Shown: one piece after another, positions 43,309 through 64,000 of the stretch | Position numbering within the stretch: position 1 is the stretch's first letter | Layout: each line of letters starts with the position of its first letter | Virus record (IMG/VR): IMGVR_UViG_3300032214_000715 | Span: 124,001 to 188,000 of that record | Length of the DNA stretch: 64,000 bases | Reading direction: 5' to 3' (one strand) | The notes under the pieces: model-generated | Database searches by the model: none | Seen by the model: the letters and a program-made list of their open reading frames with translations, nothing else | What the model was told of the DNA's origin: nothing | Translations under genes and position numbers: made by a program

Positions 43309-43362
43309 AATAATTCCTATCCTTTGTAATATTTATCAGGGCTTATTCAGCCCCGATATGTA

Positions 43363-46047: not shown

Positions 46048-46060
46048 TGTGTTCTCCTAA

Positions 46061-47293
46061 TTAAAATGTTCCCATATCTAAATAAAAACCAGCGGGCTGT
46101 TCAAAAGTACCAAAATCAAGACCTCCGGCAGTAGCAATTGCGGCCCAAGTCAATACTCCTGCTCCGTCGGTCGTTAAATATTTTCCATTATTACCAGTTT
46201 GCGATGGTAATAAATTAGCGGCTGCTTCTGCTGCGCTTGTAGCTCCAGTACCACCATTTGCTACAGCTACTGTTCCTGTTACATTTGCTGCGCTACCTGA
46301 TATGTTTCCACTTATATCTTCACCACTAACTGTAGCGCTACTACTTAACTCTGTGCCGTCACTCTTAAGATACCCGGAGCTAAAGCTTGTCTTACCAGTA
46401 CCGCCGTTAGCTACTGCTAATGTTCCGTCAAGTGTTATTGTTCCGCTATCAGTAATTGGTCCACCAGTAGTAGTAAGTCCTGTAGTACCGCCGCTAATAT
46501 CAATACTAGTGACAGTTCCATTTGTAGTAGTGATTGTAGTCCAAGTAGGAGAACTACCATTTCCATTACTAGTCAATACTTGACCGCTTGTTCCATAATT
46601 TGCTCCACTTAATCCCCAAGCGCCAGATGAAGTGAATCTAACTCTCTCTGTTTGTGAACTGCCAGTTGTTATTATTACTGATCCAACTCCATCCGGGCCG
46701 ACACCACTCTGTAAATATACATTACCACCAGTACCATTGTTAATTCCACCTGGTCCGCCTCTTAGATATACATGCCCTGGGCTACCCCCTGAAATTGGAT
46801 TACCAGAGATACCTCCAACGATAACTATACTAGCCCCAGAATTAGCACTACTTGCGGCGCCGGCACCAGAGATAGTAAATGTAGTATCACTTGATCCTAT
46901 AGTTAAAGTAGATCCGCTATAACTAATACTACTGGTGGCAGAGTAAGCGCCGCTACTATTAAATAGTATTTGCCCATTGCTACCAGGAACACTGGTTAAT
47001 CCAGTTCCACCCTGCGCTACGCTCAATGCGGTTGTTAATCCGCTAAGACTTGTTATGTCACTGTTGGACCCGCTTTTTGCTGCTCCGATGTTGACTAGAA
47101 TATCTTCAATAGTGGTTGATCCAGTACCGCCATATTCTATAGCAAGAACGCCTTTTGTAATGTTGCTAGCATTTTCACTAAAGTTTTTAGTAGCAGCATC
47201 TTGAAGATTTACTGGCTCACCAACATTAATAATCGGAGCATCCGATAGGCTAATGCCAGTTGTTGTAACGAATGGAATTTGAACACTACTCAT
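46061..47293 (-). CDS. Fibre protein ending LDFGTF...LDMGTF
   Basis: GGTG repeats; closely similar to part of 14753..16483; late promoter at 47316-47322. Confidence 0.8.
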   Translation of the reverse strand: MSSVQIPFVTTTGISLSDAPIINVGEPVNLQDAATKNFSENASNITKGVLAIEYGGTGSTTIEDILVNIGAAKSGSNSDITSLSGLTTALSVAQGGTGLTSVPGSNGQILFNSSGAYSATSSISYSGSTLTIGSSDTTFTISGAGAASSANSGASIVIVGGISGNPISGGSPGHVYLRGGPGGINNGTGGNVYLQSGVGPDGVGSVIITTGSSQTERVRFTSSGAWGLSGANYGTSGQVLTSNGNGSSPTWTTITTTNGTVTSIDISGGTTGLTTTGGPITDSGTITLDGTLAVANGGTGKTSFSSGYLKSDGTELSSSATVSGEDISGNISGSAANVTGTVAVANGGTGATSAAEAAANLLPSQTGNNGKYLTTDGAGVLTWAAIATAGGLDFGTFEQPAGFYLDMGTF

Positions 47294-47326
47294 ATATTTT
47301 CCTTGTCCATACTAGTATTTATGTTA

Positions 47327-48316
47327 TTACACAACAATACAAGTGCGGATAGCACGAATAGTAGTTACTGAGTTAGTGGGTGTTACTCTTAGTTGAAGAT
47401 TTCCAGACACATAATTGGCATCAAACGATGCTATTGTTGAGCCTGTTGCTATCATAGCAAACTCTGTATAGTAAGCGGTGGATCCATCGTGCGTGACTAA
47501 CAACTCACTGGTTTGATATGAGCTTCCGCTAGTTACTTGAATTACATATTTCACTGTTCTATAAACAGAGCCGTCAACGCTATCAACTATTTGATCGCTG
47601 TTCGTGTTGGTCGTAATTAAGGTAACAGTTGAAATAGTACCTTGATTGATGTTTAATGTTCCGACAGATAAATTATCTGTGCCAGGATTATATTTTAGTC
47701 CACTAGCAGTGTTTATTGCCTGTGCGGTACTAGTATTGCTAGAAACAAACGGAATATAGTAATTGCTGTTAGTAGTGACAGAGCCGGTATTGGCCAATGT
47801 AGATGCTGCCCCTACAGATCCAGTAATATCTGCTGCATCTATAGTTCCGGTACTGCTTAGTGCTGTACCATTGCTCTTTAAATATCCACTAGTGAATGAT
47901 GTTACTCCAGTACCGCCCTGCGCGACACTCAGTGCTGTAGTTAATCCGCTTAAGCTAGTAATGTCGCTATTAGCACCGCTCTTAGCGGCGCTTAAATTAG
48001 TTCTTGCTTCGGTAGCATCAGTCGCTCCAGTGCCGCCCTTAGCTACAGAAACTGTATTAAGACTCAGTGATATTGTTCCGCTTTGAGTAATCGGACTGTC
48101 TGTTACAGACAACGCTCCGTCAGTAGAAGAAATGGCTACACTGGTTACGGTACCGCTAGTGTTATTTCCTGTTAATTCGCCTACAGTGTTATCACTTTTT
48201 TTGTAGAATAATTTTCCGTCTGTATAGTTTATGGCTAGTTCGCCATAGTCTAAATCTTGCGCCTGTGGCATTTTTCCAGACACAGACGATCTTTTTAATT
48301 TAATGTTGCTGCTCAT
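47327..48316 (-). CDS. Short fibre protein with Mtd_N-like N-terminus
   Basis: IKLKRSS...LDYGELAINYTDGKLFY; one AKSGANSDITSL unit; late promoter at 48369-48375. Confidence 0.8.
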   Translation of the reverse strand: MSSNIKLKRSSVSGKMPQAQDLDYGELAINYTDGKLFYKKSDNTVGELTGNNTSGTVTSVAISSTDGALSVTDSPITQSGTISLSLNTVSVAKGGTGATDATEARTNLSAAKSGANSDITSLSGLTTALSVAQGGTGVTSFTSGYLKSNGTALSSTGTIDAADITGSVGAASTLANTGSVTTNSNYYIPFVSSNTSTAQAINTASGLKYNPGTDNLSVGTLNINQGTISTVTLITTNTNSDQIVDSVDGSVYRTVKYVIQVTSGSSYQTSELLVTHDGSTAYYTEFAMIATGSTIASFDANYVSGNLQLRVTPTNSVTTIRAIRTCIVV

Positions 48317-48411
48317 TTTTGTCCTAATAAGGTAAGAGGTGTTGAAGAATAAAAATTCTTCATAACATTATTTATCTATGAAAAACAAAACACAATAATA
48401 ATTTATATACA

Positions 48412-48439
48412 AAAAAAGCGCGACTAGTCGCGCTTTTTT
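48412..48439. terminator. Intrinsic terminator (perfect 28-bp palindrome)
   Basis: AAAAAAGCGCGACTAGTCGCGCTTTTTT. Confidence 0.85.
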
Positions 48440-48458
48440 GATCAATATCTCACTACAA

Positions 48459-49958
48459 TCAAGTAGTAATAGGAGAGAATGATGATATTGATGCGTTTCC
48501 GTAAGTGGTAATAGCAAAATTATTATCACTGCGATCAATAAATGTCCCATCACGGAAAGTCAACAATGATGTGTTTGATACCACAGCCAGTGCTGATGTG
48601 GACGGGGTAAAGTTACTCGTATAGAGAGCTGTTCCCTTTACTATACGAAGATTGGAAATGTATCCGTTCATCCAGTAACTGGCTCCGCCGCCAGCTATAA
48701 ATCTACCAACTGTTAGTGGTGTAGAGTTTACAGCGGTGTAGTTAACCCCATTAGAAAGTGTAGTTCCTAGTTGAGTGCCGTTAACGAATGCTCTGAGACT
48801 TGTTCCACTTCTAGATATGACAATGTGATACCATTGATTGGCCGTTGGAGTCCAAGCCCACGTTGCTCCTGAAAACCCAGGAGTATATCTATTAAGATTG
48901 AGACCTCCGTCACCCAAGTACATAGCCCAAGAACACAAGCGTTGAACAGGAACGGCGTCTATACCATCTCCTAACATAGCTAGCATTTGATAGCCGCCAG
49001 TACTTCTGAAGTACGCCCAGCACTCAATAGTAAAGTCTCCTGTACCAAAGGCAAACGCAGAATTAGAGGGTACAGTTAAATAGTCTCCATTTCCATCAAA
49101 GAAAGCACTGTGTGAGCCACTTGGGCTGACAGTTATCATATTTGTTTTTACTTCAGTGTCAGATCCTCCAGAATTGGTTGCTATTAGCTTAACGCTATAT
49201 GTTCCTGAAGTATTATATGTCGTGGTTGGATTCTGTGCTGTACTGTCAGTAGTTCCGTCATCGTTGAAATCCCACGCCCAGCTAGAAGGACTATTTGTTG
49301 ATGTATCAGTAAAAGTAACAGTTAGCGGAGCAGTGCCGGACGTTAAATTCGCAGAAAAGTCGGCTACTGGAGCTGACTGTGCGACTGTTATCAAATTTAG
49401 CTTAATTACTTGACCTGATCCACCTGAATTTGTTGCTGTCAATTTGGCACTGTATGTTCCAGGAGTGCTATAAGAGTATGATGGACTTTGAACAGTGCTG
49501 TCAGTAGTTCCGTCATTATTGAAGTCCCATGCCCAGGATGTCGGTGAATTGGTTGAAGTGTCAGTAAAGTTTACTGTTAGTGGGGCCGGCCCGGATACAG
49601 TATCGGTGGAGAAGTCAGCGACCGGAACTGGTTGAGTGACAGTTATGACGCTGGTTTTTACTACTTCGCCAGAGCCACTTGAGTTTGTTGCTACTAGCTT
49701 AACAGTATATGTACCAGGTGTATTGTATGTGGTACTTGGATTTTGAACGGTGCTGTCAACAAACCCATTATTGTTGAAGTCCCACGCCCACTCAGTGGGT
49801 GAGTTGGTGGATGTATCAGTAAAGTTTACTGTTAGTGGAGCAGTTCCAGATACTACGTTAGTAGAGAAATCAGCCACTGGCGGCACAATGGTGGCCGCCG
49901 CTCTACTTCCACTAGTTCTGCCGCTGATGAAAACGTTTCTAAAAGATAGTTGTCCCAT
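48459..49958 (-). CDS. Adhesin with 3 PKD domains and 1 LamG domain
   Basis: Three PVADFS...GxAPLTVxFTDTS..P..WAWDF...PGTY.VKL units, then a LamG-like domain; late promoter at 49999-50005. Confidence 0.88.
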   Translation of the reverse strand: MGQLSFRNVFISGRTSGSRAAATIVPPVADFSTNVVSGTAPLTVNFTDTSTNSPTEWAWDFNNNGFVDSTVQNPSTTYNTPGTYTVKLVATNSSGSGEVVKTSVITVTQPVPVADFSTDTVSGPAPLTVNFTDTSTNSPTSWAWDFNNDGTTDSTVQSPSYSYSTPGTYSAKLTATNSGGSGQVIKLNLITVAQSAPVADFSANLTSGTAPLTVTFTDTSTNSPSSWAWDFNDDGTTDSTAQNPTTTYNTSGTYSVKLIATNSGGSDTEVKTNMITVSPSGSHSAFFDGNGDYLTVPSNSAFAFGTGDFTIECWAYFRSTGGYQMLAMLGDGIDAVPVQRLCSWAMYLGDGGLNLNRYTPGFSGATWAWTPTANQWYHIVISRSGTSLRAFVNGTQLGTTLSNGVNYTAVNSTPLTVGRFIAGGGASYWMNGYISNLRIVKGTALYTSNFTPSTSALAVVSNTSLLTFRDGTFIDRSDNNFAITTYGNASISSFSPITT

Positions 49959-50009
49959 AATATTATTTTCCTAACTTGTGTTTAAAAGATGTTGATGATA
50001 TTTATGAAA

Positions 50010-50042
50010 AAAATAGAGAAATTTATTAAATTTCTCTATTTT
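50010..50042. terminator. AT-rich hairpin / terminator
   Basis: AAAATAGAGAAATTT-ATT-AAATTTCTCTATTTT. Confidence 0.7.
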
Positions 50043-50074
50043 GTACAGTACATTACTACATTGTAAGCACTGAA

Positions 50075-51841
50075 TTAATAAACACCTCCATCCAAGTCGG
50101 CATTTTGTACCCAGTTTGCTGTTACTAAATCATTATCAGCAAGATTGGTAGAGTACTGAGCCGGTGTTGGACCGCTTATTGAAACCTTAGATGTTGTTCC
50201 AGCAGGTAGAACCATACTAATACCGTTAGTAGTAGATTCTAGAATCAACCCGGCATCACCGCGAATAGTCATAGTATCGCCGGCTGCTGACTCAACTATG
50301 CCGTCACCGTCAGAATCAAAAATGATGCTGTTGGTAGAAAGAGTTACTGAACCAGTACCATTTGGAGCGATGACAATATCAGCGTTCGCTGTTGAAGTAC
50401 TGAGTGTAACTGTTCCATCATTACCAGTGGCTAGTGTTGCTCCGCCTACGGTTAGAGTCTCAGTTCCAGAATTCCAACTTAGACCAGAATCAGTAGTAAC
50501 TGGATCTGTTCCAGAACCAATTAGTAGATTTCCAGCAGTAAATGTAGTTGCTCCAGTACCACCATTGCTGACTGGTAGTGTACCTGTAACTGTATCAGTG
50601 TCTAGCTCAACTGATCCAGCTGCCATCTTGACAGCGGTTACAGCACCATCAGCAATCTTACTGGTTGTAACGGCACTGTTTGTTAGTGTTACTGCTAAGT
50701 CAACATTTCCAGAACCATTGAATGAAACAGCGCTAGCAGTAGTAACATCACCAGATACACTGAAGTCACGAGCAGTTTCAAGTGTAGTAGCAGTGTCAGC
50801 ATTACCAGTTAGATCACCAGTTATGTTAGCTTCAACTTGCTTGTTGAATGCCCACTTGTCTCCCGAAGAAACATAAGTTAGTGTAGCACCAGCACCAGCA
50901 ACTGTTAGACCGGCTCCATTTGCCTGAGCAGCAGTAGTTGCGTCCTTAGCTAGAGTTAGATTGATGTCACTGATAGCAACAGCGGTTGAATTTACAGTTG
51001 TTGTGGTGCCTTGTACTGTTAAATCACCAGTAATTACGGCGTTACCAGTTACAGTAACACTAGCAGCAGTAATATCGTCTGAACTTAGTGTTCCATTTAC
51101 GGTTACATTGTTGAATGTTACGTTGTCGGTTGTGCCGACTGACTGACCGATAGCTACTACGCCGTCAGTGATTGATACGCCTGTACCACCACTGAAGTGA
51201 GCACGAACTTCACTAGCGCTTGGGCCAGTGTAGGTGAATACGCCAGTAGCAGAGTCGTATGAGAATGAACCATCACCGCCAGCATCTGTAGCGCTGAATA
51301 GACTTCTTACAGAAGATGTATCAGTTGTAGCAGCGATTGTTAATGTACCAGCTACATCATCGTATGTCTTGGTGATGTTTGAACCAGCTACGATTAAATC
51401 AGCAACACGGTCGTCTACACGCTCGTTTGTGAAATATAGATTTGTTGTGCCTTCAGAAACACTGTCTGTACCGAAACTAATATTTGAAGTTCCGTCAAAG
51501 CTTTCGCCGTTGATTGTACGAGCGGTTTCTAGAGCGGTTGCTGTACTAGCATTGCCGGTCAAAGCACCGACAAAACTTGAAGCTGATACTGTGCCTAAAC
51601 CAGATATTCCATTGCTGGAATCCAGAATAACTGCCTTACTAGCAGTAGCTGTGCCTGCTGTAACTTTTAGTAGGTCAGCGTAATATGCTCCGCCGACTTC
51701 AGAAATGGTAACAGCAGTTCCGTCCGTGCTACTACCGAAATATAATTTACCAGAGCCAGATGAATATGCTAACTCACCGAACGCTAGATTGGTTGGGACG
51801 GCACTCCCAGTAGAACGTTTGATTTTAATTGTTGATGCCAC
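50075..51841 (-). CDS. Fibre protein (Mtd_N-like N-terminus, ends LDGGVY); paralogue of 51970..53796
   Basis: GTG start with AAGGAG; TIKIKRSTG...FGELAY; EGxxNLYFT; late promoter at 51899-51905. Confidence 0.85.
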   Translation of the reverse strand: MASTIKIKRSTGSAVPTNLAFGELAYSSGSGKLYFGSSTDGTAVTISEVGGAYYADLLKVTAGTATASKAVILDSSNGISGLGTVSASSFVGALTGNASTATALETARTINGESFDGTSNISFGTDSVSEGTTNLYFTNERVDDRVADLIVAGSNITKTYDDVAGTLTIAATTDTSSVRSLFSATDAGGDGSFSYDSATGVFTYTGPSASEVRAHFSGGTGVSITDGVVAIGQSVGTTDNVTFNNVTVNGTLSSDDITAASVTVTGNAVITGDLTVQGTTTTVNSTAVAISDINLTLAKDATTAAQANGAGLTVAGAGATLTYVSSGDKWAFNKQVEANITGDLTGNADTATTLETARDFSVSGDVTTASAVSFNGSGNVDLAVTLTNSAVTTSKIADGAVTAVKMAAGSVELDTDTVTGTLPVSNGGTGATTFTAGNLLIGSGTDPVTTDSGLSWNSGTETLTVGGATLATGNDGTVTLSTSTANADIVIAPNGTGSVTLSTNSIIFDSDGDGIVESAAGDTMTIRGDAGLILESTTNGISMVLPAGTTSKVSISGPTPAQYSTNLADNDLVTANWVQNADLDGGVY

Positions 51842-51914
51842 GAATAATCTCCTTAATTTAGTCTAGCAAAGTTGCTAGATAGTCTATAGTCCTAGATATA
51901 TTTATCCAATCAAG

Positions 51915-51947
51915 AAAAAAGAGAGAATTAATTTCTTAATTCTCTCT
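51915..51947 (-). terminator. AT-rich hairpin / terminator
   Basis: AGAGAGAATTAA-TTTC-TTAATTCTCTCT next to an A-run (T-run on the minus strand). Confidence 0.7.
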
Positions 51948-51969
51948 CGTTCTATTCACTCACGAGTGA

Positions 51970-53796
51970 TTAGTATGTACCGCCATCTAGTAGATCAGGA
52001 TCGATAGATACTACGCCGTCAACTACGTCAAAGTGATTTGCGTTGTAGCTGGCAACACCCTTTGTACCTGTGTCGGTTGCTACGGCAACACTTACGGTTA
52101 CTTCGTTAGCAGTAACGGCAGTGCTGATAGCGCCTGTTCCGGAAATCGCTAGAGACTCGCCTAGAGCAACAGCGTCAGAACCAGAACCACCAGTTAGAGT
52201 GATTGAACTGTTAGCTAGCTTAGCGTTGGTAACAGCACCGTCAGCGATCTTGGCAGTTGTAACTGCGTCAGCAGCGATCTTGGCTTCTGTTACAGCGGCA
52301 GCAGCTAGTTCAGCAGTGTCAACTCCAGCAGCCTTGATGGCTACGGCGCCAGCGGTTACAGCGAAATTGCCAGAAGCGAAGCTAGCAACACCCTGAACGG
52401 TGTCAGAAGCTACATCAACACTTACGGTTACTGTGTTAGCAGTAACGGCAGCACTGATAGCGCCAGAACCAGCGAATGTTAGAGTTTCAGTAGCTAAGTC
52501 TACTGTGTCTGTGCCACTGTCACCAGCGATATCTAGTGAGGTGGTGATAGAAGCGGTTGTAACTGATGTTACACGACCCTTAGCGTCAACTGTTACTACT
52601 GGAATTTCTGAAGAAGAACCGTAGGCACCAGCTGTTACGCCAGAGTTTGCTAGTGTTAGAACTAGGTCAACGTTACCTGTGCCATCAAATGATACGGCAG
52701 AAGCAGTAGCATCGCCGCTAGCACTGAAGTCACGAGCTGTTTCTAGAGCAGTTGCTGTGTCAGCGTTACCAGTTAGATCACCAGTTACGTTAGCTTCTAC
52801 TTGCTTGTTGAATACCCACTTGTCGCCAGCTGAAGCGTATGTCAATGTGGCTGAAGCACCAGCTACTGTTAGACCAGCGCCGTTAGCTTGAGCAGCAGTG
52901 GTAGCGTCTTTAGCTAGAGTGAGGTTGATGTCACTGATAGCAACAGCAGTTGAGTTAACTGTTGTGGTTGTACCCTGTACAGTTAGGTCGCCTGTGATTA
53001 CAGCGTTACCAGTTACGGTTACGTTGGTAGCGGTGATGTCGTCAGAACTTAGTGTTCCGTCAACTGTTACGTTGTTGAATGTAACGTTGTCGGTTGTACC
53101 AACAGCCTGACCGATGGAAACTTGACCGTCGGTGATTGATACGCCTGTACCAGCACTGAAGTGAGCGCGAACTTCACTAGCGCTTGGGCCGGTGTAAGTT
53201 AGAACGCCAGTTACGTTGTCGTAAGATAGTGAGCCGTCACCGCCAGCGTCTGTTACGCTGATTGAATCACGAGCGCGAGTTTCTGTGAAGTATAGATTGG
53301 TAGAGCCTTCAGCGATGTCGTCTGTGGTTAGATCAGCAGCGATGTCGCCTGTGTCTAAAGAGAAAACGCCAGTAGCGCTGTCGTATGTTAGAGCACCTGA
53401 TGGATCGCTAGCACTTACTGAACCACGAGCACGAGCTTGTGTGAAGTATTGATTGGTTGCGCCTTCTGCTAGAGCATCGGTGTCATGATTGCTGATGTCA
53501 CTAACTTGACCAGTTAGATCGCCAACGAACTCGGTAGCAGTAACAGTGGCTAGATTGCCAATATTACGACTAGCGTCAACGACAAGAGACTTGCTGGCAG
53601 CAGCAGTACCTGGGGTAGCTGTTAGTAGATCAGCATAGTAAGCGCCACCGACTTCGGTGATGTTTACGGTAGTACCGTTTGTGCTACTACCAAAATATAG
53701 CTTGCCTGAGCCAGATGAATATGCTAACTCACCAAAAGCTAGATTGGTTGGGGCTGCTGAGCCCGTTGAACGTTTGATTTTGATTGTATTTGCCAC
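51970..53796 (-). CDS. Putative major (abundant) fibre subunit (Mtd_N-like N-terminus, ends LDGGTY)
   Basis: GTG start with AGGAG; perfect TATAAATA at 53866-53873; strong GAC/AAC/ATC/TTC/GCT/GGT codon preference. Confidence 0.85.
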   Translation of the reverse strand: MANTIKIKRSTGSAAPTNLAFGELAYSSGSGKLYFGSSTNGTTVNITEVGGAYYADLLTATPGTAAASKSLVVDASRNIGNLATVTATEFVGDLTGQVSDISNHDTDALAEGATNQYFTQARARGSVSASDPSGALTYDSATGVFSLDTGDIAADLTTDDIAEGSTNLYFTETRARDSISVTDAGGDGSLSYDNVTGVLTYTGPSASEVRAHFSAGTGVSITDGQVSIGQAVGTTDNVTFNNVTVDGTLSSDDITATNVTVTGNAVITGDLTVQGTTTTVNSTAVAISDINLTLAKDATTAAQANGAGLTVAGASATLTYASAGDKWVFNKQVEANVTGDLTGNADTATALETARDFSASGDATASAVSFDGTGNVDLVLTLANSGVTAGAYGSSSEIPVVTVDAKGRVTSVTTASITTSLDIAGDSGTDTVDLATETLTFAGSGAISAAVTANTVTVSVDVASDTVQGVASFASGNFAVTAGAVAIKAAGVDTAELAAAAVTEAKIAADAVTTAKIADGAVTNAKLANSSITLTGGSGSDAVALGESLAISGTGAISTAVTANEVTVSVAVATDTGTKGVASYNANHFDVVDGVVSIDPDLLDGGTY

Positions 53797-53865
53797 TTTG
53801 TTTTTCTCCTAGGTTAAAGTGTATTATGTATCTTAGTATGGGTACTACGAAAGTACTCATACATA

Positions 53866-53873
53866 TATTTATA
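53866..53873 (-). promoter_or_regulatory. T4-type late promoter, full consensus TATAAATA
   Basis: Exact T4 gp55-dependent consensus, followed by a 5' leader hairpin (53836-53862). Confidence 0.8.
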
Positions 53874-53910
53874 CAAGACGTTTATTTTTTGAATAAAAAC
53901 TTGTATTTCC

Positions 53911-54372
53911 TTAAAATGCGCCGCCGTCTAACTCAGAAGACGCATCCCATTTTCCAGTAACACTATTGTACTTCAATAGTGCGTCCTGAGCAATTGGGTC
54001 GGCGGCATTTACATCTCCTATGTCTGATAATTTATCAATCTTTGCGCTGACGGTAAATTTAGTCCAATTTTCTTCCGCATTTGGCATTTCACCCGTGATG
54101 GAATCACGACTTTGCCCTGAAAGAAGAGAGTATTTATAGTATGAATCACCAGTTCTGGTGAACCCGCCCGCAGTGTATTCAGTTTTTACATAGACCAACA
54201 TACCCTCAGTTAATCGTTGACCTGTGATATTGGTTAATCTATTTCCAAATGATCCAGTGACGCTTTGTAACGAGCCACGAATTTCCGTATCCAGTACGAT
54301 TGGATGATTGCCAGTAGGGCTCCAAGTACCAGTCCAAGTGTTTCTTGTTAAACCATCGTAATTTGTGCTCAT
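53911..54372 (-). CDS. Small fibre adaptor protein ending LDGGAF
   Basis: ATGA-coupled to the upstream gene; RLTEGMLVYV and LSDIGDV...LKY...W motifs. Confidence 0.75.
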   Translation of the reverse strand: MSTNYDGLTRNTWTGTWSPTGNHPIVLDTEIRGSLQSVTGSFGNRLTNITGQRLTEGMLVYVKTEYTAGGFTRTGDSYYKYSLLSGQSRDSITGEMPNAEENWTKFTVSAKIDKLSDIGDVNAADPIAQDALLKYNSVTGKWDASSELDGGAF

Positions 54373-57300
54373 GATATACTCACATATGTTGTTCCAGGCT
54401 GTAAGGTTATTCCATACAGCGTGTATCCTTCAGCAACATATCCTGCTGGCGGCGTAGTTGGTTGTAAACTAACAGTGTTTCCAGTTGTCACGCTTACATC
54501 AGATAACAACGACGATGTTGGACCAGTTTTGAATGATGTTGGCTGACTAGCACTAGTGCGAACGGCGAACCAAAATGCTCTTGGAGTGCTTTCAGTATTG
54601 TTTACATTCCCGGCAAATACTTTAACTTGACTTCCAAGCGCGGTGACTCCCGCGGCAAAAGCAGTTTCGTTTACTATGTTAGAAGCTGTTGGTGGAACAC
54701 TTGTAGCTGTAGTAAATAGCCAGAAACTAGGGTATGTAAATGTAGCACTGGCGCTAGCGGTAGTAGCACTTAGATTTGCCGTGTACGAAGTTCCAGTGAC
54801 GCTTGCTGGTCGTGTAAATGTGGTAGAAACACTTACAGTTCTTGTTGTCGCCGTGTTATTTTTGTGTATAGGATCAGTAAATGTAAATGTTCCACTTGCT
54901 GTAGCACTACTTGTAGTACCACCCACTGCTGTAACACTATTAGCATAATTTGAAGTACTTGACATTCCAGTTACAGTAACTGTATATGCCACTGAATTGT
55001 AACTCTGTAAGAATGTGTTGCCAGTTAAACTGGAAAGTGCTACTCCAAGAGTAGGTGTCGCCCAGTTTACTGATATACTAGCCGTAGAGGTCATGTACTC
55101 AGCGGTACTAGTTCCATTATAGAAATTGAATGCTATTGTCCCAGCGGCATTTCCACCTGCTATTGTAGTACTTGTTGGTCTGATAAATGAATCGGCGTCT
55201 GTAGTAAACGTCTGAGTCCAATCTACAGTTCCTGCTGGAGTGGCAGATTGTACTCCAGCACTAAATGTATTCAATGCGCTTATTGAACCGCTTGTAGCAG
55301 TTATACTTCTAACGGCGGAAATATATTGATCAGTAATGTCATCTGGATTTACAACACTTACAGCAAATGATGTAATTGGTTGATCCCAGCTTGGAGATGC
55401 GGGAGATATAGTAGCACTGATTGTTGGTGTAAATGTGGCCAGTGTTAAACGAAGCTTGTTTCCAAAGAATTCAGCCACGCGAACTGGTGATGTGGACCCA
55501 TTCTCTTGGTATCCAGTAAGAGTTCTATAAGAGCCACTAGTAGTAAATACCAGCGGGCCAGATTGCTCAGATATACTAGTCCAACTAACATTTCCAGCAC
55601 CGTCTGTACTCAATACTTGTCCACTGGTTCCTCCACCAATGCTTATATTGTCTGTGCTTTCAAATGCTACTTTATCGGCAGTGGCAGTTACACCAGAAAC
55701 GCCGGCAAAAGACCCATTGTTGTTATATTGTAGCTGCCCGTCAGTTCCACCAGGAATTCCAGCCGCGTCATCAACTGGAATCCACTTATCCATTACTGAG
55801 TTATAACCCAGTAACTGTCCATCGGTTGGTGGAACTGTAGTCAAGTCAACATTAACTAAATCATCAAGACTTCCAGTTGTAGCTACTGTGGCAAAATCTG
55901 GCTTGTCGGTGATGTTATTCCACGTTAGTGAAGTTGTTGTAATGTATCCAGCGGCGTTCCCAAAGATACCAACATCTGGAACGGTGCCGTTAAGATTTTC
56001 CCAAGTGAAGTTTGATTGAGTTACATACTGCGCGTCGTTCGTGAATTCACTTACGTTTGTTGGGCGATTAATTACGTTTTCCCACGTTATATCAGTTTTT
56101 AACGCATAATTTATATCGTTTTGAAAGTAACTAAGACCAGTTGGAGTACCGCTAATAGAACTCCATGCTAATTCTGAAAATTTTACAAATCCAACATCAT
56201 TTGTAAAGTCACTTACTTTAGTTGGAGCATTAGTCAAGTCTGTGTAGTTTCCACCGAATGGAGCTGCTACACTTATAGTTCCATCCTCGGCGACTGTAAC
56301 GTTATCACCTATCTTAACTCCACCCAAAATAGTGCTAGTTGCTACCGCTATTGGGGTAGTATTTGACCAAGATACGTCACTACCGTCAGTAATTAAAACT
56401 TTGTTTGCGTTTCCGTTCTGACTTGGTAATAGCGCTGCTCGTGCTGCCGCTGGGGTTTCTGCTCCTGTGCCGCCGCTCTCTACTGGTAGTACGCCGCTAA
56501 ATCCAACTGTTATGTTTCCAGTTGATCCAGTAATTGATATGTTTTGTCCAGCAGTAGCAGATAAAACTCCGGTATTGCTGATAGTATTTTCTACTATACT
56601 GATTCCGTTGCCAGCAATGTAGTTACCTACGGATCCAAACTGAGACCACTCTATAGCACTTGTTCCCAGAGATATAGTTCCGGGAGTAATCATAATCCAT
56701 TGAGTGCCAGCTAATGTAGTTCCATTCTGTATAAATGTGAAATCACCAGCAGACACTTCACCAGCAAAGCTGTTATCAAAATCAGTGGCTCGCATCAGTA
56801 CCCAATTTGGGTTATTAGCTGATAGCACATATATGCCGTTTTGTTTCTTGTCGGTTTGATTCTTAAGTAAGATTCTATCGCCAACTATTAATGTGTGACC
56901 ATCTAGTTGTGTAAGTTGTCCTACGCCAGTTAGGGTTGCTCCTATACCGTTTGATCCATTGTTATAAGTTCCGTTTAGATTAGCGGTAGAAGCAACCGCA
57001 CAAGCAAGGTGTACGTTAAGACCACTAGCTAAATTATCTACGTATTGTTTTGTGGCAGCATCTAACGCACTTACTGGGTCCGCGTGTAGCGTTAGTGTGC
57101 CCTGCATAGTGTCGCCGGCTCGATTTACAGGAGTATATCCAAGACCACTGATTACATCAGACCCGCTGAACGCTTTCCAAACTATATTAGTTCCATCAGT
57201 TGATAGTACTCGACCAGAAAATGATGCCTGCGACGGCAATAAATTATTAATAGCATCAGTTGGATTACTTGCCCCAGTACCGCCGTTAAATACTCCTAAA

Positions 57301-57569
57301 GTTCCGCCTACTGTAAATGTGCCAGAAGTCGTTATTGGGTTTCCGTCTCCAGTAGTAAAGGTTAGTCCGGTACCACCCGGATCAATATTTACAGACTTTA
57401 CCGAACCAAAATCAGGGTTAGCGTTAAAATATTTAATAGTAGAGGTGCCGTCTTTATAAAACAGACGACCGTCAGCATAGTTAATCGCAATTTCACCAAA
57501 CGATAAGTCAGATATTAATGGACTTGTTCCAGTCGTACCCGAATTTTTAATAATAATCGTTGTTGCCAT
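54369..57569 (-). CDS. Fibre protein (1066 aa) with Mtd_N-like N-terminus
   Basis: TIIIKNS...FGEIAINYADGRLFY; DAATKQYVD...GDRILLKNQ; repeated W..I...P..VS.F.ND units. Confidence 0.8.
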   Translation of the reverse strand: MATTIIIKNSGTTGTSPLISDLSFGEIAINYADGRLFYKDGTSTIKYFNANPDFGSVKSVNIDPGGTGLTFTTGDGNPITTSGTFTVGGTLGVFNGGTGASNPTDAINNLLPSQASFSGRVLSTDGTNIVWKAFSGSDVISGLGYTPVNRAGDTMQGTLTLHADPVSALDAATKQYVDNLASGLNVHLACAVASTANLNGTYNNGSNGIGATLTGVGQLTQLDGHTLIVGDRILLKNQTDKKQNGIYVLSANNPNWVLMRATDFDNSFAGEVSAGDFTFIQNGTTLAGTQWIMITPGTISLGTSAIEWSQFGSVGNYIAGNGISIVENTISNTGVLSATAGQNISITGSTGNITVGFSGVLPVESGGTGAETPAAARAALLPSQNGNANKVLITDGSDVSWSNTTPIAVATSTILGGVKIGDNVTVAEDGTISVAAPFGGNYTDLTNAPTKVSDFTNDVGFVKFSELAWSSISGTPTGLSYFQNDINYALKTDITWENVINRPTNVSEFTNDAQYVTQSNFTWENLNGTVPDVGIFGNAAGYITTTSLTWNNITDKPDFATVATTGSLDDLVNVDLTTVPPTDGQLLGYNSVMDKWIPVDDAAGIPGGTDGQLQYNNNGSFAGVSGVTATADKVAFESTDNISIGGGTSGQVLSTDGAGNVSWTSISEQSGPLVFTTSGSYRTLTGYQENGSTSPVRVAEFFGNKLRLTLATFTPTISATISPASPSWDQPITSFAVSVVNPDDITDQYISAVRSITATSGSISALNTFSAGVQSATPAGTVDWTQTFTTDADSFIRPTSTTIAGGNAAGTIAFNFYNGTSTAEYMTSTASISVNWATPTLGVALSSLTGNTFLQSYNSVAYTVTVTGMSSTSNYANSVTAVGGTTSSATASGTFTFTDPIHKNNTATTRTVSVSTTFTRPASVTGTSYTANLSATTASASATFTYPSFWLFTTATSVPPTASNIVNETAFAAGVTALGSQVKVFAGNVNNTESTPRAFWFAVRTSASQPTSFKTGPTSSLLSDVSVTTGNTVSLQPTTPPAGYVAEGYTLYGITLQPGTTYVSIS

Positions 57570-57583
57570 TTATTTTTCCTTGT

Positions 57584-58552
57584 TTAACCGAAACTTCCGC
57601 CGTTTATTATGCCTACTAAATTGTCAACGTAATACTTGTTAACTAGATCGTTATCAGCTAGACCTTGTGAGTACAGTTGAGCAGTGGGGCCTTGTACTGT
57701 AACTTTATTAGCATTATTGTTGGGTAGTATCATTGTAGTGTCTCCTGACTGAGACTCCAAAAATAAATTAGATGTTCTGGCGCGCAGTGTTAGAGTTTCA
57801 CCTGAATTAGTCTGTATTACTGAATTTCCAGTTCCAGTTACAACTACACTTCCACTTCCATTTGGTAACAACACTAGATCAGAATTAGTTGCCGTGGCAG
57901 AAATACTTGAGTTGGCACCGTTTATTACAACTGGATAAGCTGATCCAACGCTCAGTGTGCTTTGTGTGTTATCAAAACTAAGTTTATCCGATTGAGCTAC
58001 TGCGTCTGTGCCGTTTCCGTACAGTATTTGATTTGGCATTAACTCAGTGAGTCCAGTACCGCCGCTACTTACTGGTACTGTATCAAGTGATATAGTAAGC
58101 GTGTCGCCGTTTAACTCAACCGTAATCGGGCTATCGCCAGTAGTAGTTACTGTTTTTCCAACAACCTTCCAGGCAGCTCCGTCATAGTATTCCGCTACAG
58201 GGCTGGATCCGCTAGTGTTAATTCTCAACATTCCAACTGTCGGGGACTCTGGTCGTTCTTCAGTAGTACCAACTGGTATACTTACGGCTGAGGTTCCATC
58301 AAATTTAACGACACCCTGTTGTTGTAAACTAACTGTAGTTCCAGCAAAGCTTAATTTCCCAGTGTCGGAAGATATATTTACGTCGGTGTCTAATGCGGTA
58401 ATAGACGAAGCCACCATTGGAATATGGGTGGATTCGTTTGTTGCTCTTACGCTAAAGGAATTAGTAATTACATCGTAATAAACTACGCCGCCATTTTTCC
58501 CGTACTGTACCGAGTTTGATGTTCCTGCTAATCCGTAATTTTTTGTAACCAT
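57584..58552 (-). CDS. Fibre/connector protein ending INGGSFG
   Basis: IPVGTTEERP...GMLRIN...EYYDG.W; C-terminal region paralogous to the end of 50075..51841; TATAAATA at 58572-58579. Confidence 0.75.
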   Translation of the reverse strand: MVTKNYGLAGTSNSVQYGKNGGVVYYDVITNSFSVRATNESTHIPMVASSITALDTDVNISSDTGKLSFAGTTVSLQQQGVVKFDGTSAVSIPVGTTEERPESPTVGMLRINTSGSSPVAEYYDGAAWKVVGKTVTTTGDSPITVELNGDTLTISLDTVPVSSGGTGLTELMPNQILYGNGTDAVAQSDKLSFDNTQSTLSVGSAYPVVINGANSSISATATNSDLVLLPNGSGSVVVTGTGNSVIQTNSGETLTLRARTSNLFLESQSGDTTMILPNNNANKVTVQGPTAQLYSQGLADNDLVNKYYVDNLVGIINGGSFG

Positions 58553-58591
58553 ATTTAATTCCTAACTTAAATATTTATATCACGATCATCA

Positions 58592-60634
58592 TCAAACATA
58601 TGTGATGATTATAGTGGCCGCACCTTGAGTTGATCCACCATCATTAAAAGTACCAGTTACTGTTACATCTCCATCAACATTAACTCCTGGTGTGCCACCA
58701 ACTCCAAATTTAAGCCCAGTATCAGCGGTGTATATACCAACGGCATTTAAGTTGTTTAGATTTATCGCCATTAGTCCATTGATGGAAGTCACTGGAGTTT
58801 CTGAATTATTGATTAAGTAACCAAGCGCAAGTGTGGCCAATCCGTTAAATGGAACAGACACATTTACTGCTACCGATGCTATTCTGCGACCAGTTGTTAG
58901 TGTTCCAATATTAAATTCAAGCGGAGAATTATTGGTTAATGTGTAGGATAGTGTCTTGCTGTCTACACTTGCTGAACTTTGTCTAGCAATTAAGACCCAA
59001 TCAGATCCGTCCCACAACCAATTACTCCATTGATTTACATAATTATTATTTCCATCATTGCTGTCAATTACATAGGCTTGATCTCCTATTAATGGAGTAA
59101 GTGAGTCTCTGAAGGCCAAGTCAGTTACTACCATTGCGCCTGCTTGACGCACTCCGCCCTGTATATAAAGACCAGCGGCCTTTGTTCCATTTTCAACACT
59201 TACTAAACCAAAGTCTAGAGTGACACTTCCCTGTACATCTAAGAAATTAATTGCTCTGGCATCAATGGCAGTAAATTTGACAATATTCTGTGTAGATGCT
59301 GAAGTACTTAACGAGATACCAGATCCTGAGTTTGGTCCAGCAAAGGGAACACCATTGGTATCACTGTTAACATTACTAATAGTAATTATTCCGCCGCTGT
59401 CATTAATAATTTTCAATCCTGTTCCAGAGTTTATTACCTCGGCAGATATATTGGGTATGTTCGCATTGTTAATATCCTTTGCCATTTGCGTTGGTAGTGA
59501 GTAATCTTCGTATCCAGGAACAGATGATCTGCTAGAAAACGTCACCAATACTCCATTTATGCTGGCGCTGACCGGATTAGAGGCGGCGAATAGCGCAGGC
59601 TCACCATAGATTGTTGATATATTAGATGATATCGTTTGCGCCGATGATGGACTTAAACTTAGCTCCGCATTTACTCCAGTGTCTTCAGTCGCCGAGTTAA
59701 TAGCAGATACTAAATCCTCTGCGGACCCAGTTCCACCAACAGTGATATTTACTGAATTCAGAGAAATTATACTTCCAGAAGTTGTCGGGCCAGTAGAAGT
59801 CCCAGACACCTTAGATACGGTCTGATTTCTTAATTTAATGTAGATAGGAGACCCGGCTGAATCCAACGATAGTTCCCCTGGAACATCAGTTGAACTGTAT
59901 ATTTGATCGCCTACGTCACCTGGAAGAGAGTCTAGAAAATCAACTATCTTGTTGATGGGATTTATAGTAAACCATCCAGGGATAGCATCAGACACAGACG
60001 TTACTCGTCCAATTACAATTTTATAAAATTCATCGGCTAATACATATCTATGTGTTTCGTTATCTACGGCTATGACATCATTGATAGCAAACGTATTGTC
60101 TGCTTGATATAGTGCGTAATCGTACTGTAGATTATTGTACGTAAATCTACTAATTAAATTTTGAGTGAAGTTAGAAGAAATTCCTGATGGGGGAACTGGG
60201 TCTATTTGCGGTATTCCGTCTCCACTTAGATTAAAAATGACATATACACCGAGACTTAGACCACCATTTCCAACTTGAGAGGTATCTCTAAAGGTATTGT
60301 ATCTATAAATATCCTGAACAGTGGCAACTACGCTATTTGCTGATTTGGACTCTATGGATATTATTTGCCACGCTTGCCCAGTAGTGGCGTTGGCAATCCA
60401 CTGCCCTATAGTTACATCATATCCATTATACAATCCGGGATTTCTAGTCAGATAAGAGCTTTGATTTTGAGATGCCACTGACATCTCAATTTTCCAGCGA
60501 TATGCTTTTGCCGACGGCGCTGGAGAGCCCGTAGATGGGAAATTTAAAGGATTGTACCAGGGTAAAAACTCTGTGCCCAATACGCTAGTAACGTTAGCCT
60601 CTAATGTTTTTACGGGTTTATTTAAAAATGACAT
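58592..60634 (-). CDS. Virion structural protein (680 aa), possible fibre anchor
   Basis: Non-repetitive beta-rich ORF inside the late fibre cluster; GAGG RBS. Confidence 0.7.
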   Translation of the reverse strand: MSFLNKPVKTLEANVTSVLGTEFLPWYNPLNFPSTGSPAPSAKAYRWKIEMSVASQNQSSYLTRNPGLYNGYDVTIGQWIANATTGQAWQIISIESKSANSVVATVQDIYRYNTFRDTSQVGNGGLSLGVYVIFNLSGDGIPQIDPVPPSGISSNFTQNLISRFTYNNLQYDYALYQADNTFAINDVIAVDNETHRYVLADEFYKIVIGRVTSVSDAIPGWFTINPINKIVDFLDSLPGDVGDQIYSSTDVPGELSLDSAGSPIYIKLRNQTVSKVSGTSTGPTTSGSIISLNSVNITVGGTGSAEDLVSAINSATEDTGVNAELSLSPSSAQTISSNISTIYGEPALFAASNPVSASINGVLVTFSSRSSVPGYEDYSLPTQMAKDINNANIPNISAEVINSGTGLKIINDSGGIITISNVNSDTNGVPFAGPNSGSGISLSTSASTQNIVKFTAIDARAINFLDVQGSVTLDFGLVSVENGTKAAGLYIQGGVRQAGAMVVTDLAFRDSLTPLIGDQAYVIDSNDGNNNYVNQWSNWLWDGSDWVLIARQSSASVDSKTLSYTLTNNSPLEFNIGTLTTGRRIASVAVNVSVPFNGLATLALGYLINNSETPVTSINGLMAINLNNLNAVGIYTADTGLKFGVGGTPGVNVDGDVTVTGTFNDGGSTQGAATIIITYV

Positions 60635-60653
60635 TTATCTGCCCTCGGATGCG

Positions 60654-63952: not shown

Positions 63953-64000
63953 AGAGCGAGTCTATAGCTCAATCAAGCACTGGCGGTCTCAATCAATTGA

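What the first reader, a model, noticed from the sequence alone, without database searches (positions are those of the whole stretch)
50075..53873. Two tandem paralogues carry both plug and socket: candidate self-polymerising filament, one with high-expression codon usage
Seen in sequence: both genes begin with near-identical TIKIKRSTGS.(A/V)PTNLAFGELAYSSGSGKLYFG and end in LDGG(T/V)Y. Gene 51970..53796 strongly prefers GAC, AAC, ATC, TTC, GCT and GGT codons, unlike neighbouring fibre genes (GAT/AAT/ATA). It also has a perfect TATAAATA promoter, an AGGAG RBS, a 5' hairpin and its own terminator. Inference: a protein with both connector ends could polymerise head-to-tail into long hair-like filaments. 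On that model 51970 is the abundant subunit, 50075 a minor or spacer variant, 53911 a primer (plug only) and 47327 a cap (socket only).
Basis: partly seen in the sequence, partly recalled or inferred. Interest (0 to 1): 0.8.

Follow-up and report, generated by a model that had tools for sequence, protein, structure and literature searches.

The report
Serially joined phage fibre segments
Two neighbouring genes of a giant freshwater phage encode fibre segments that carry a T4-like "socket" at one end and a short "plug" at the other, so they can be joined end to end; one is built for much higher expression, which leaves open, but does not prove, that it repeats along the fibre.

Summary
Genes 51970..53796 (A, 608 aa) and 50075..51841 (B, 588 aa) share 37 of their first 40 residues. 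Both end in LDGG(T/V)Y. A has a strong, conserved codon bias: NNC/(NNC+NNT) is 0.75 against 0.31 in 15 neighbouring fibre genes, p=4e-24. A also has its own promoter-like motif, RBS, 5' hairpin and terminator.

The N-terminus aligns with the T4 gp37 N-terminus, the region that binds gp36, and is probably related to Mtd_N. The C-terminal D-x-G-x-Y/F matches the conserved end of the T4 gp36 family.

In about 60 related loci, 78% of genes ending in this motif are directly followed by a gene starting with the N-terminal motif, against 2.3% otherwise.

The window holds five plugs and five sockets. Four plug-socket pairs are directly adjacent; the fifth has one gene between.

Best reading: a modular, serially joined fibre, anchor 53911, then A, then B, then tip 47327. 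B is a mosaic of an A-like front and a 57584-like rear.

Open-ended self-polymerisation of A is not shown. Three things keep it alive at about 0.2: A's conserved excess-expression signature, the indistinguishable A and B sockets, and the similar anchor and A plugs.

The parts
53911..54372 (-). Anchor protein (153 aa). It has a conserved N-terminal docking domain and a C-terminal plug ...KWDASSELDGGAF. Its start overlaps the stop of 54369..57569.
   Evidence: The family has an invariant N-terminal 110 residues and variable C-terminal parts: plug, collagen repeats or tip domains. AF2 gives pLDDT 73, and residues 1-37 are not folded in isolation. No PDB fold match.
53866..53873 (-). Late-promoter-like TATAAATA in front of A. 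It is one instance of the window-wide ATAAATA motif.
53836..53862 (-). 5' leader hairpin of the A transcript.
   Evidence: -10.7 kcal/mol, z=-2.06.
53806..53810 (-). AGGAG ribosome-binding site, 9 nt before the GTG start.
   Evidence: The same sequence is present in the orthologue L080.
51970..53796 (-). Paralogue A (608 aa), a fibre shaft segment. It carries a gp37-N-like socket (about aa 1-45) and the plug LDGGTY. Its codon usage indicates high expression.
51919..51948 (-). Intrinsic terminator after A.
   Evidence: -20.9 kcal/mol, z=-3.65.
51899..51907 (-). GGATAAATA promoter-like motif in front of B, followed by a weak leader hairpin.
50075..51841 (-). Paralogue B (588 aa), a mosaic. Residues 1 to about 400 are A-like. 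The last roughly 175 aa are homologous to the C-terminal half of 57584..58552. The plug is LDGGVY.
   Evidence: 38% identity, E=6e-33.
50005..50043 (-). Intrinsic terminator after B.
   Evidence: -22.4 kcal/mol, z=-6.0.
48459..49958 (-). Intervening gene with three PKD domains and one LamG domain, and neither plug nor socket. LamG or PKD genes sit at a similar place in L079.
47327..48316 (-). Tip protein (329 aa). It has a socket (NIKLKRSSVSGKMPQAQDLDYGELAINYTDGKLFYK) and no plug. Its distal domain is shared with tips that follow NC genes in other phages.
   Evidence: E=2e-11.
57584..58552 (-). A second plug-bearing protein (...INGGSFG). Its C-terminal module is the source type of B's rear part.
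54369..57569 (-). Socket-bearing 1066-aa fibre directly downstream of 57584.
46061..47293 (-). A third plug-bearing protein, with a doubled motif ...LDFGTF...LDMGTF at its end.
43363..46047 (-). Fibre with an Mtd_N-type socket (LQLRRGL...GELIFTTDTQRLYVGDG) directly downstream of 46061.
   Evidence: The Mtd profile gives E=3e-23 against PDB 1YU0.

Best explanation
A and B are trimeric shaft segments of a modular fibre whose parts are separate gene products joined end to end. This part is inferred from comparative evidence.

**The joint.** Each joint pairs a short C-terminal tail (hydrophobic-D-G/x-G-x-Y/F-COOH, the plug) of the upstream protein with the roughly 45-residue N-terminal domain (the socket) of the next protein. 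The socket belongs to the T4 gp37 N-terminus family and is probably related to Mtd_N. This is the arrangement of the T4 gp36-gp37 junction.

**Wiring.** In this phage the most likely wiring follows gene order: anchor 53911 (docks on the virion, plug LDGGAF), then A, then B, then tip 47327 (socket only, distal domain). Two further two-part fibres, 57584+54369 and 46061+43363, use the same joint.

**A and B.** A is transcribed as its own late unit and is translated at a much higher level than its partners. B arose from an A-like copy that acquired the plug module of a 57584-like protein. How many A trimers sit in one fibre is not determined.

**Status of the steps.**
- Shown: the motifs, their strict terminal position, gene adjacency, co-variation of plug and socket types, the codon bias and its conservation.
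- Inferred: physical contact of plug and socket, the order of segments, and trimeric state.
For: **1. Socket.**
- It aligns with the T4 gp37 N-terminus; K, S, P, L, G-E and A are invariant.
- gp36 binds the N-terminal region of gp37 (PMC3004832).
- The profile comparison with Mtd_N-type N-termini runs in register, E=1.7e-4, probability 49%.
- The Mtd_N-type profile hits PDB 1YU0 at 3e-23. That beta-prism is presumed to attach Mtd to the tail fibre (PMC10743442).
- The socket profile finds 21,814 clusters at 50% identity. In 149 of the 150 best hits it starts within the first 10 residues. It was never internal in the fetched loci.

**2. Plug.**
- [DE][GAS]G.[YF] lies in the last 8 residues of 81 of 703 distinct genes, against 0.43 expected from its internal rate.
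- T4 gp36 relatives end in DFGYY, DFGSY, DYGIF or DYGEF.

**3. Adjacency.** 75 of 96 plug-ending genes are directly followed by a socket-starting gene, against 13 of 566 otherwise (odds ratio 152).

**4. Types co-vary.**
- E[SA]GQ[YF] adaptors pair with 'RIKRSEVSGNP..GGDRLYIG' sockets.
- DGGTY pairs with 'LKKSSV.GKVP..DLDYGELALNY.DGKLFYK' sockets.
- LDMG[AT]F pairs with Mtd-type sockets.

**5. Minimal and fused forms.**
- Connectors of 67 and 116 aa consist of little more than socket plus plug.
- Rare proteins have an internal socket preceded by a degenerate plug.

**6. Same layout elsewhere.** The small adaptor, then a both-ended (NC) shaft gene, then a tip, occurs in siphovirus-like and T4-like loci and in cultured Prochlorococcus phage P-HM1.

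**7. Balance in the window.** Five plugs and five sockets. Four pairs are directly adjacent; the fifth, B to tip, has one gene between.

**8. Synteny and bias recur.** In two other jumbo-phage contigs, A has NNC 0.71 and 0.58, B 0.41 and 0.29, and neighbours 0.24-0.41.

**9. Both paralogues are maintained.** The conserved core is about 90% identical in protein but only about 50% of its codons are identical.
Against: - No structure or experiment shows the plug touching the socket. The T4 gp36-gp37 junction is not in the PDB copy searched.
- The plug is only 5-6 residues, and the same DGGx[YF] type precedes several socket types. Pairing specificity, and hence the order A then B then tip, cannot be read from sequence.
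- B and the tip are separated by an unrelated PKD/LamG gene.
- A strict 1:1:1:1 chain does not explain why A alone is codon-optimised.
- The loci were found through homology to A and are not phylogenetically independent, so the p-values overstate the evidence.
- Neither A, B nor the anchor matches Pfam gp36 (PF03903) or Mtd_N at E<=0.1.
- The AF2 monomer model of A is poor: pLDDT 59.6, pTM 0.30.
Confidence: 0.65

Rival explanations
1. A polymerises head-to-tail (A-A-A...) into long hair-like filaments. The anchor 53911 primes the chain, B is occasionally incorporated or acts as an adaptor, and the socket-only tip 47327 caps it. Filament length would be set by the ratio of A to tip.
For: - A carries both ends.
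- The anchor plug (LDGGAF) and A's own plug (LDGGTY) are of the same type.
- A and B sockets cannot be told apart and co-vary within genomes: LEYGELAYS in both paralogues of L079, LAFGELAYS in the window and L080. So a plug that fits B's socket should fit A's.
- Only A is codon-optimised. Pooled over three genomes, the anchor has NNC 0.40, while tips have 0.27-0.34 and B's own rear part 0.27. This implies a molar excess of A over its partners.
- A is a monocistronic unit with a structured leader and a terminator.
- Across lineages, NC genes whose adaptor plug is of their own type have higher relative bias than those with a distinct E.GQ[YF] adaptor plug: median log odds ratio 0.73 against 0.28, Mann-Whitney p=0.004.
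- Relatives of this phage group (CBB, phAPEC6, Atu_ph07) carry hair-like appendages. The CBB paper states that the gene products could not be pinpointed, and none is named in the passages read from the other two (PMC5259590, PMC7247149, PMC6102473).
Against: - There is no direct evidence of any A-A contact.
- The five-to-five balance of plugs and sockets suggests defined pairs.
- T4, the only characterised example, has fixed stoichiometry.
- The cross-lineage comparison rests on roughly four independent lineages per class.
- The GTG start is conserved in A, which is unusual for a maximally expressed gene.
- Excess A could serve other ends, such as more attachment sites or driving assembly.
- Relatedness to the hairy phages rests on one neck or tail protein at 32-36% identity.
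Confidence: 0.2
2. A and B are alternative shafts used in parallel, not in series. Each binds the same anchor plug through identical sockets and each carries its own distal partner. The virion would then bear two fibre kinds, the A kind being the more numerous.
For: - The sockets are identical.
- By homology both C-terminal modules pair with 'AINY.DGKLFYK'-type sockets elsewhere. A-type ends precede tips in siphovirus-like loci. B's 57584-type end precedes 54369.
Against: - The anchor and tip would then need at least A's abundance, but they show background codon usage.
- The gene order A then B is conserved in three genomes.
- The five-to-five balance of plugs and sockets would be broken.
Confidence: 0.1
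3. The shared termini are not an intermolecular joint. The N-terminal domain would be a generic trimerisation or virion-docking cap. The C-terminal tail would be a folding, chaperone-recognition or stability signal.
For: - The plug is very short.
- No complex structure exists.
- Several plug-ending genes (21 of 96) have no socket gene directly downstream.
Against: - Adjacency (odds ratio 152) and co-variation of types.
- The T4 gp36-gp37 precedent.
- Mini-connectors made only of the two motifs.
- The equal count of plugs and sockets in the window.
Confidence: 0.05

Closest known systems
Phage T4 long tail fibre distal half: gp36 (hinge connector) joined to gp37 (distal subunit)
   Same: - Separate trimeric gene products are joined end to end, and the genes lie in the order of assembly.
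- The N-terminus of gp37 aligns with the sockets of A, B, 47327 and 54369.
- The gp36 family ends in D-[FY]-G-x-[YF], like the plugs.
- gp36 binds the N-terminal region of gp37 (PMC3004832).
   Different: - T4 has one such joint and no protein that carries both ends.
- A, B and the anchor are not homologous to gp36 outside the last residues (no PF03903 hit).
- Here the joint is used five times in one genome, and a both-ended segment is duplicated and unequally expressed.
Bordetella phage BPP-1 Mtd (major tropism determinant) on the tail-fibre ends; Pfam Mtd_N, PDB 1YU0
   Same: - An N-terminal domain of about 50 residues, a beta-prism in Mtd, is presumed to attach a trimer to the end of the preceding fibre protein (PMC10743442).
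- 43363's N-terminus belongs to this type.
- The gp37-type socket aligns with it in register.
- The upstream gene bbp9 ends in ...ADLGGIA, a plug-like tail without the aromatic residue.
   Different: - Homology of the A and B socket to Mtd_N is only probable (hhalign probability 49%).
- Mtd is a terminal receptor-binding protein, not a through-segment.
Adaptor-NC-tip side fibres of uncultured marine and freshwater siphovirus-like and T4-like phages, and of Prochlorococcus phage P-HM1 (PHM1_091 to PHM1_095)
   Same: - The same three-part layout and the same protein family as A (40-50% identity).
- A p132-like gene (phrog_1084/3304), then a 70-120 aa adaptor with a plug, then an NC shaft, then a socket-bearing protein.
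   Different: - These phages have a single NC gene.
- In most of them the adaptor plug (E.GQ[YF]) differs from the NC plug, and the NC gene is not clearly codon-biased.
- None has been characterised experimentally as far as the searches here show.
Hair-like appendages of Rak2-like and related jumbo phages (vB_PcaM_CBB, phAPEC6, Atu_ph07)
   Same: - A jumbo myovirus with a very large fibre-gene array.
- Thin appendages of about 120 nm. For CBB the authors could not pinpoint the gene products, and none is named in the passages read for phAPEC6 and Atu_ph07.
- On a T4-based length-per-residue estimate of my own (inference, not a tool result), an anchor+A+B+tip chain of 1,678 residues would be roughly 90-100 nm.
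   Different: - No homologue of A covering at least 80% of its length exists in any cultured phage record (0 of 108 matching records), and no Rak2-like phage is among the organisms listed.
- The link to this group rests on one protein at 32-36% identity.
- The morphology of this uncultured phage is unknown.

Membership tests
T4 gp37-type N-terminal attachment domain (the socket) | A domain of about 45 residues at the extreme N-terminus with the pattern h-x-h-[KR]-[KRN]-[SG] ... P ... L..GE[LI]A ... [LF][YF] | tested here: met
   Alignment A4 includes T4 gp37; K8, S10, P16, L19, G22, E23 and A25 are invariant. The profile finds 21,814 clusters, and 149 of the 150 best hits start within the first 10 residues.
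T4 gp37-type N-terminal attachment domain (the socket) | Binds the C-terminal end of the preceding fibre protein | not testable with these tools
   Supported only indirectly, by gene adjacency and the T4 literature.
Pfam Mtd_N (PF18454) | Significant match to the family profile | tested here: inconclusive
   No Pfam hit for A or B at E<=0.1. hhalign against Mtd-type N-termini gives E=1.7e-4 and probability 49%, in register. The Atlas's nearest cluster is auto-named Mtd_N-containing. 43363's group matches Mtd itself at 3e-23.
T4 gp36 hinge connector (Pfam PF03903) | Sequence homology to gp36 over the domain | tested here: not met
   No PF03903 hit in A, B, 53911, 57584 or 46061.
T4 gp36 hinge connector (Pfam PF03903) | C-terminal D-x-G-x-[YF]-COOH tail next to a gp37-type N-terminus encoded by the following gene | tested here: met
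   gp36 relatives end in DFGYY, DFGSY, DYGIF or DYGEF. A ends in LDGGTY, B in LDGGVY and the anchor in LDGGAF.
Self-polymerising filament protein | Homotypic head-to-tail contacts giving oligomers beyond one trimer | not testable with these tools
   Only monomer AF2 was available, and the model is poor.
Bactofilin (PF04519) | Pfam match above the gathering score | tested here: not met
   15.3 and 15.9 bits against a cut-off of 27.9. The weak match most likely reflects beta-helix-like repeats.
Highly expressed late phage gene | Codon usage shifted to NNC, GGT and GCT with avoidance of ATA and GGA, relative to genes of the same genome, and conserved in orthologues | tested here: met
   Comparison with the major capsid gene was not possible, because that gene is not in the window and could not be fetched.

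The most novel reading that the evidence does not exclude
A is the repeating subunit of a capped, linear protein polymer on the virion, of the form anchor-(A)n-B-tip. Its length would be set by expression ratios. It would be the first phage fibre built by open-ended head-to-tail addition of one trimer, and a candidate for the unexplained hairs of jumbo phages. More broadly, the D-x-G-x-Y/F tail with the gp37/Mtd_N-like domain would be a universal connector that lets phages concatenate fibre modules.
Probability: 0.2. Interest if true: 0.85.

Novelty: new variant of a known kind. Interest (0 to 1): 0.6.

Why it matters
If the joint is real, it gives a simple sequence rule for wiring multi-part phage fibres from genome data alone: a gene ending in D-x-G-x-Y/F is followed by a gene starting with a gp37/Mtd_N-like domain. 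The socket occurs in more than 20,000 protein clusters, so the rule would apply widely.

It would explain how fibre modules are swapped between very different phages. It also identifies the likely contact residues of the still unsolved T4 gp36-gp37 junction.

The both-ended, highly expressed segment is a concrete candidate for the hair-like appendages of jumbo phages, whose gene products could not be pinpointed in CBB. It is also a candidate building block for engineered fibres of chosen length.

Cultured phages that carry the same layout make the rule testable: Prochlorococcus P-HM1 and P-HM2. Cultured phages with an A-like socket, whose layout was not inspected here, are further candidates: Pelagibacter phage Mosig, Methylophilales phage Melnitz and Limnohabitans phage DC31.

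Tried and rejected
- **Megablast of the region against cultured phages:** no match.
- **tblastn of A:** only partial module matches, none covering the full length.
- **Pfam:** only sub-threshold bactofilin hits, rejected as a family assignment.
- **tRNA scan:** none found.
- **PDB by sequence, for A and for T4 gp36:** nothing found, so the junction cannot be read from a solved structure.
- **AF2 of the anchor:** a moderate model, but no significant PDB fold match; the best hits were SH3-like at E>1.
- **AF2 monomer of A:** pLDDT 59.6 and pTM 0.30. This is too poor for a fold search, which was therefore not run.
- **Expression data:** no RNA run could be listed. DNA contigs of related strains show the same arrangement and no copy-number change; the joints seen are probably cross-mapping between the paralogues and other phages.
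- **Reference to a known highly expressed gene:** the Atu_ph07 tail sheath was used to look for the sheath locus of this phage, but the scan only found close relatives of Atu_ph07. The major capsid comparison is therefore still open.
- **Horizontal transfer as the cause of A's bias:** rejected. The shift is NNC/GGT/GCT with only a modest GC3 change. It is strongest in the core shared with B, and it recurs in orthologues.
- **TATAAATA as a special signal:** rejected in favour of a general ATAAATA late motif.

Full report
**Observation.** Both start with GTG.
- A (51970..53796, 608 aa) and B (50075..51841, 588 aa) share 37 of their first 40 residues. They are 65% identical over residues 1 to about 420.
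- A central core (about aa 180-380) is about 90% identical in protein, but only about half of its codons are the same. The duplication is therefore old and both copies are under purifying selection.
- The last roughly 190 residues are unrelated except for the final LDGGTY and LDGGVY.
- The expression signals are all present: TATAAATA at 53866..53873, AGGAG at 53806..53810, a leader hairpin (-10.7 kcal/mol, z=-2.1) and strong terminators after A and after B.
- One correction is needed. TATAAATA as such is no more frequent than chance. Its core ATAAATA occurs 16 times on the coding strand, and 13 of those are in the 6% of the window that is intergenic (p=8e-14). They lie 5-80 nt before about a dozen genes, so this is the phage's general late-promoter-like motif and not a peculiarity of A.
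- A, B and the small gene 5540..5965 do stand out by long, structured leaders.

**Codon usage.**
- At two-fold codons plus Ile, A uses the C-ending codon 101 of 135 times (0.75). B uses it 62 of 129 times (0.48). Fifteen other fibre-array genes use it 1054 of 3378 times (0.31). Fisher tests give A against the others p=4e-24 and A against B p=9e-6.
- A has no ATA among 25 Ile, 3 GGA among 65 Gly and 74 GCT among 100 Ala.
- GC3 barely changes (0.34 against 0.22-0.36). The pattern is therefore the classical translational-selection pattern and not a foreign base composition.
- Along A, the bias is weakest in the first 90 codons (0.42) and strongest in the shared core (0.91).
- In B, the A-like core still shows 0.65, but B's own rear third is at background (0.27).
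- The bias is conserved. In two other jumbo-phage contigs with the same synteny (L079 from a 356-kb contig, L080 from a 141-kb contig), the first paralogue has 0.71 and 0.58 with no ATA. The second has 0.41 and 0.29, and the neighbours 0.24-0.41. All four genes start with GTG.

**Context.**
- The window comes from an uncultured freshwater or riverine phage. The contigs are 239 and 341 kb.
- Its tail-sheath-stabiliser-like protein is 32-36% identical to those of Atu_ph07, PA5oct and their relatives.
- From 14.7 to 63.8 kb the minus strand is one array of fibre genes, five of them encoding 1758-2239 residues.

**What the termini are: the socket.**
- The N-terminal motif aligns with the N-terminus of T4 gp37. 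T4 gp36 binds that region of gp37 (PMC3004832).
- The motif also aligns in register with Mtd_N-type N-termini, at E=1.7e-4 and probability 49%.
- The Mtd_N-type group, which includes 43363 in this window, matches Bordetella phage Mtd in the PDB at 3e-23.
- Mtd's N-terminal beta-prism is presumed to attach it to the tail fibre (PMC10743442).
- A profile of the socket finds 21,814 clusters at 50% identity. In 149 of the 150 best hits the match begins within the first 10 residues. It was never internal in the fetched loci.

**What the termini are: the plug.**
- The C-terminal motif matches the end of T4 gp36...QDFGYY. Diverged gp36 relatives keep D-[FY]-G-x-[YF] as the end.
- In the fetched loci, [DE][GAS]G.[YF] lies in the last eight residues of 81 of 703 distinct genes, against 0.43 expected from its internal frequency.

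**Comparative evidence for a joint.**
- Among distinct adjacent gene pairs in about 60 related loci, 75 of 96 plug-ending genes are directly followed by a socket-starting gene, against 13 of 566 otherwise (odds ratio 152). The loci were found through homology to A and are not independent, so the p-value is inflated. The pattern nonetheless holds in siphovirus-like, T4-like and jumbo contexts.
- Plug and socket types co-vary. Adaptors of 80-120 aa ending in E[SA]GQ[YF] precede 'RIKRSEVSGNP...GGDRLYIG' sockets. NC proteins ending in DGGTY precede 'LKKSSV.GKVP...DLDYGELALNY.DGKLFYK' sockets. LDMG[AT]F precedes Mtd-type sockets.
- Proteins of 67 and 116 residues exist that are little more than a socket and a plug.
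- Rare proteins carry an internal socket preceded by a degenerate plug. These look like gene fusions across the joint.
- In BPP-1, the fibre gene upstream of mtd ends in ...ADLGGIA.
- Cultured Prochlorococcus phage P-HM1 has a p132-like gene, a 74-aa adaptor (...VNGGSF), a 560-aa NC protein (...IDGGTF) and then, after a 69-aa gene, a giant protein annotated gp7 that starts with a socket.

**Wiring in the window.**
- Five proteins end in a plug: 57584, 53911, A, B and 46061. Five start with a socket: 54369, A, B, 47327 and 43363.
- In gene order the pairs are 57584 to 54369; 53911 to A to B, then past one PKD/LamG gene to 47327; and 46061 to 43363.
- 53911 belongs to a family with an invariant N-terminal domain of about 110 residues. 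That domain is followed in different phages by a plug, collagen repeats or a tip domain. It therefore looks like the virion-docking anchor.
- In P0022 the same domain is fused directly to a fibre.
- 47327's distal domain is homologous to the tips that follow NC genes elsewhere. An orthologous tip follows the paralogue pair in L080.
- B's rear 175 residues are 38% identical (E=6e-33) to the rear of 57584. B is thus a mosaic of an A-like front and a 57584-type plug module.

**Is A a self-polymerising subunit?**
- *In favour.*
  - The anchor's plug and A's plug are of one type.
  - A and B sockets cannot be distinguished and change together between genomes.
  - Only A shows the excess-expression signature. 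The anchor (pooled 0.40), the tips (0.27-0.34) and B's own part (0.27) do not.
  - Across lineages, NC genes whose adaptor has their own plug type show more relative bias than those with a distinct adaptor plug: median log odds ratio 0.73 against 0.28, p=0.004, but on few independent lineages.
- *Against.*
  - There is no direct evidence of an A-A contact.
  - Plugs and sockets balance five to five.
  - The only characterised precedent, T4, has fixed stoichiometry.
  - The GTG start is conserved in A.
  - Excess A has other possible explanations.
- I rate the serial-joint fibre at 0.65, open-ended polymerisation at 0.2, parallel alternative shafts at 0.1 and no intermolecular joint at 0.05.

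**Relation to known systems.**
- The system works like the T4 gp36-gp37 junction and like Mtd on BPP-1 fibres. However, A, B and the anchor are not members of the gp36 family (no PF03903 hit), and their link to Mtd_N is only probable.
- Hair-like appendages of jumbo phages CBB, phAPEC6 and Atu_ph07 lack an identified gene product in what was read: the CBB authors say so explicitly, and none is named in the passages read for the other two.
- No homologue of A covering at least 80% of its length exists in any cultured phage record, and no Rak2-like phage is among the organisms listed.
- I found no paper describing the C-terminal tail as the partner of the gp37/Mtd_N-type domain. The library is incomplete, so this is absence in what was searched.

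**Limits.**
- No RNA run was listed.
- The major capsid gene could not be reached for comparison.
- The AF2 monomer models are moderate for the anchor and poor for A. No multimer prediction was available.

Noticed in passing
window 5..64000, minus strand (e.g. 58572-58578, 47316-47322, 43330-43336, 37991-37997, 31986-31992, 23235-23241, 6438-6444): ATAAATA, usually followed by C or T, sits 5-80 nt before about a dozen genes. Of 16 occurrences on the coding strand, 13 are intergenic (p=8e-14). It looks like a T4-late-like promoter motif for this uncultured jumbo phage.
   Followed up: partly
window 5540..5965 (-) and its leader up to about 6050: A 141-aa gene with no family match has the same kind of long structured leader, ATAAATA motif and AGGAG-type RBS as A. 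It may be another abundantly made late protein.
   Followed up: partly
window 7398..8225 (-), 8222..9121 (-), 9131..9595 (-): A GIY-YIG-type homing endonuclease gene overlaps the end of a thymidylate synthase gene by 4 nt. A DHFR gene lies just upstream.
   Followed up: no
window 11261..12547 (-) and 12641..13891 (-): A gene pair encodes a MoxR-like AAA ATPase and a DUF2201 metallopeptidase-like/VWA protein. It lies between the nucleotide-metabolism genes and the fibre array.
   Followed up: no
window 46061..47293 (-), C-terminus; L020 101-aa ORF: Plugs that precede Mtd-type sockets are doubled: ...LDFGTF-(9-10 aa)-LDMG[TA]F. The first copy resembles T4 gp36's DFGYY.
   Followed up: partly
L062:9211-9561, L062:9531-9767; L031:2559-2912, L031:2896-3117: Mini-connector proteins of 116 and 67 aa consist essentially of a socket followed by a plug. 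They lie in series before a 456-aa Mtd-type fibre, and the whole cluster sits directly upstream of gp13-, gp14- and gp15-like neck genes, the position of wac in T4.
   Followed up: partly
P0306 (residues about 215-260), P0309 (about 115-165), P0308 (about 125-170): Rare proteins have a second, internal socket. In P0306 and P0309 it is preceded by a degenerate plug (YIDGNEP, TIDANTS). These are likely gene fusions across the joint.
   Followed up: partly
L088 (Prochlorococcus phage P-HM1) 6844..10186: The giant protein annotated 'baseplate wedge subunit gp7' begins with a gp37-type socket (MATRIKLKRSTVAATVPTTSNLVDGEIALNIADKKLYARNG). It follows an adaptor, an NC protein and a 69-aa gene. Socket-bearing proteins may therefore not all be distal fibres.
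   Followed up: no
L085 (Bordetella phage BPP-1) 4599..6125: Bbp9, the putative tail fibre encoded directly upstream of mtd, ends in ...NIGLADLGGIA. This is a plug-like D-x-G-G-hydrophobic tail that lacks the aromatic residue.
   Followed up: partly
window 51970..53796 and 50075..51841; L079 and L080 orthologues: GTG start codons are conserved in both paralogues in all three genomes, although A is otherwise optimised for high expression.
   Followed up: partly
window 50957-51258 and 53071-53523: In riverine and aquatic metagenome contigs, the conserved core of A and B attracts many fragments at 80-90% identity and higher depth than the flanks. This core module is shared by many other phages in those communities.
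   Followed up: no
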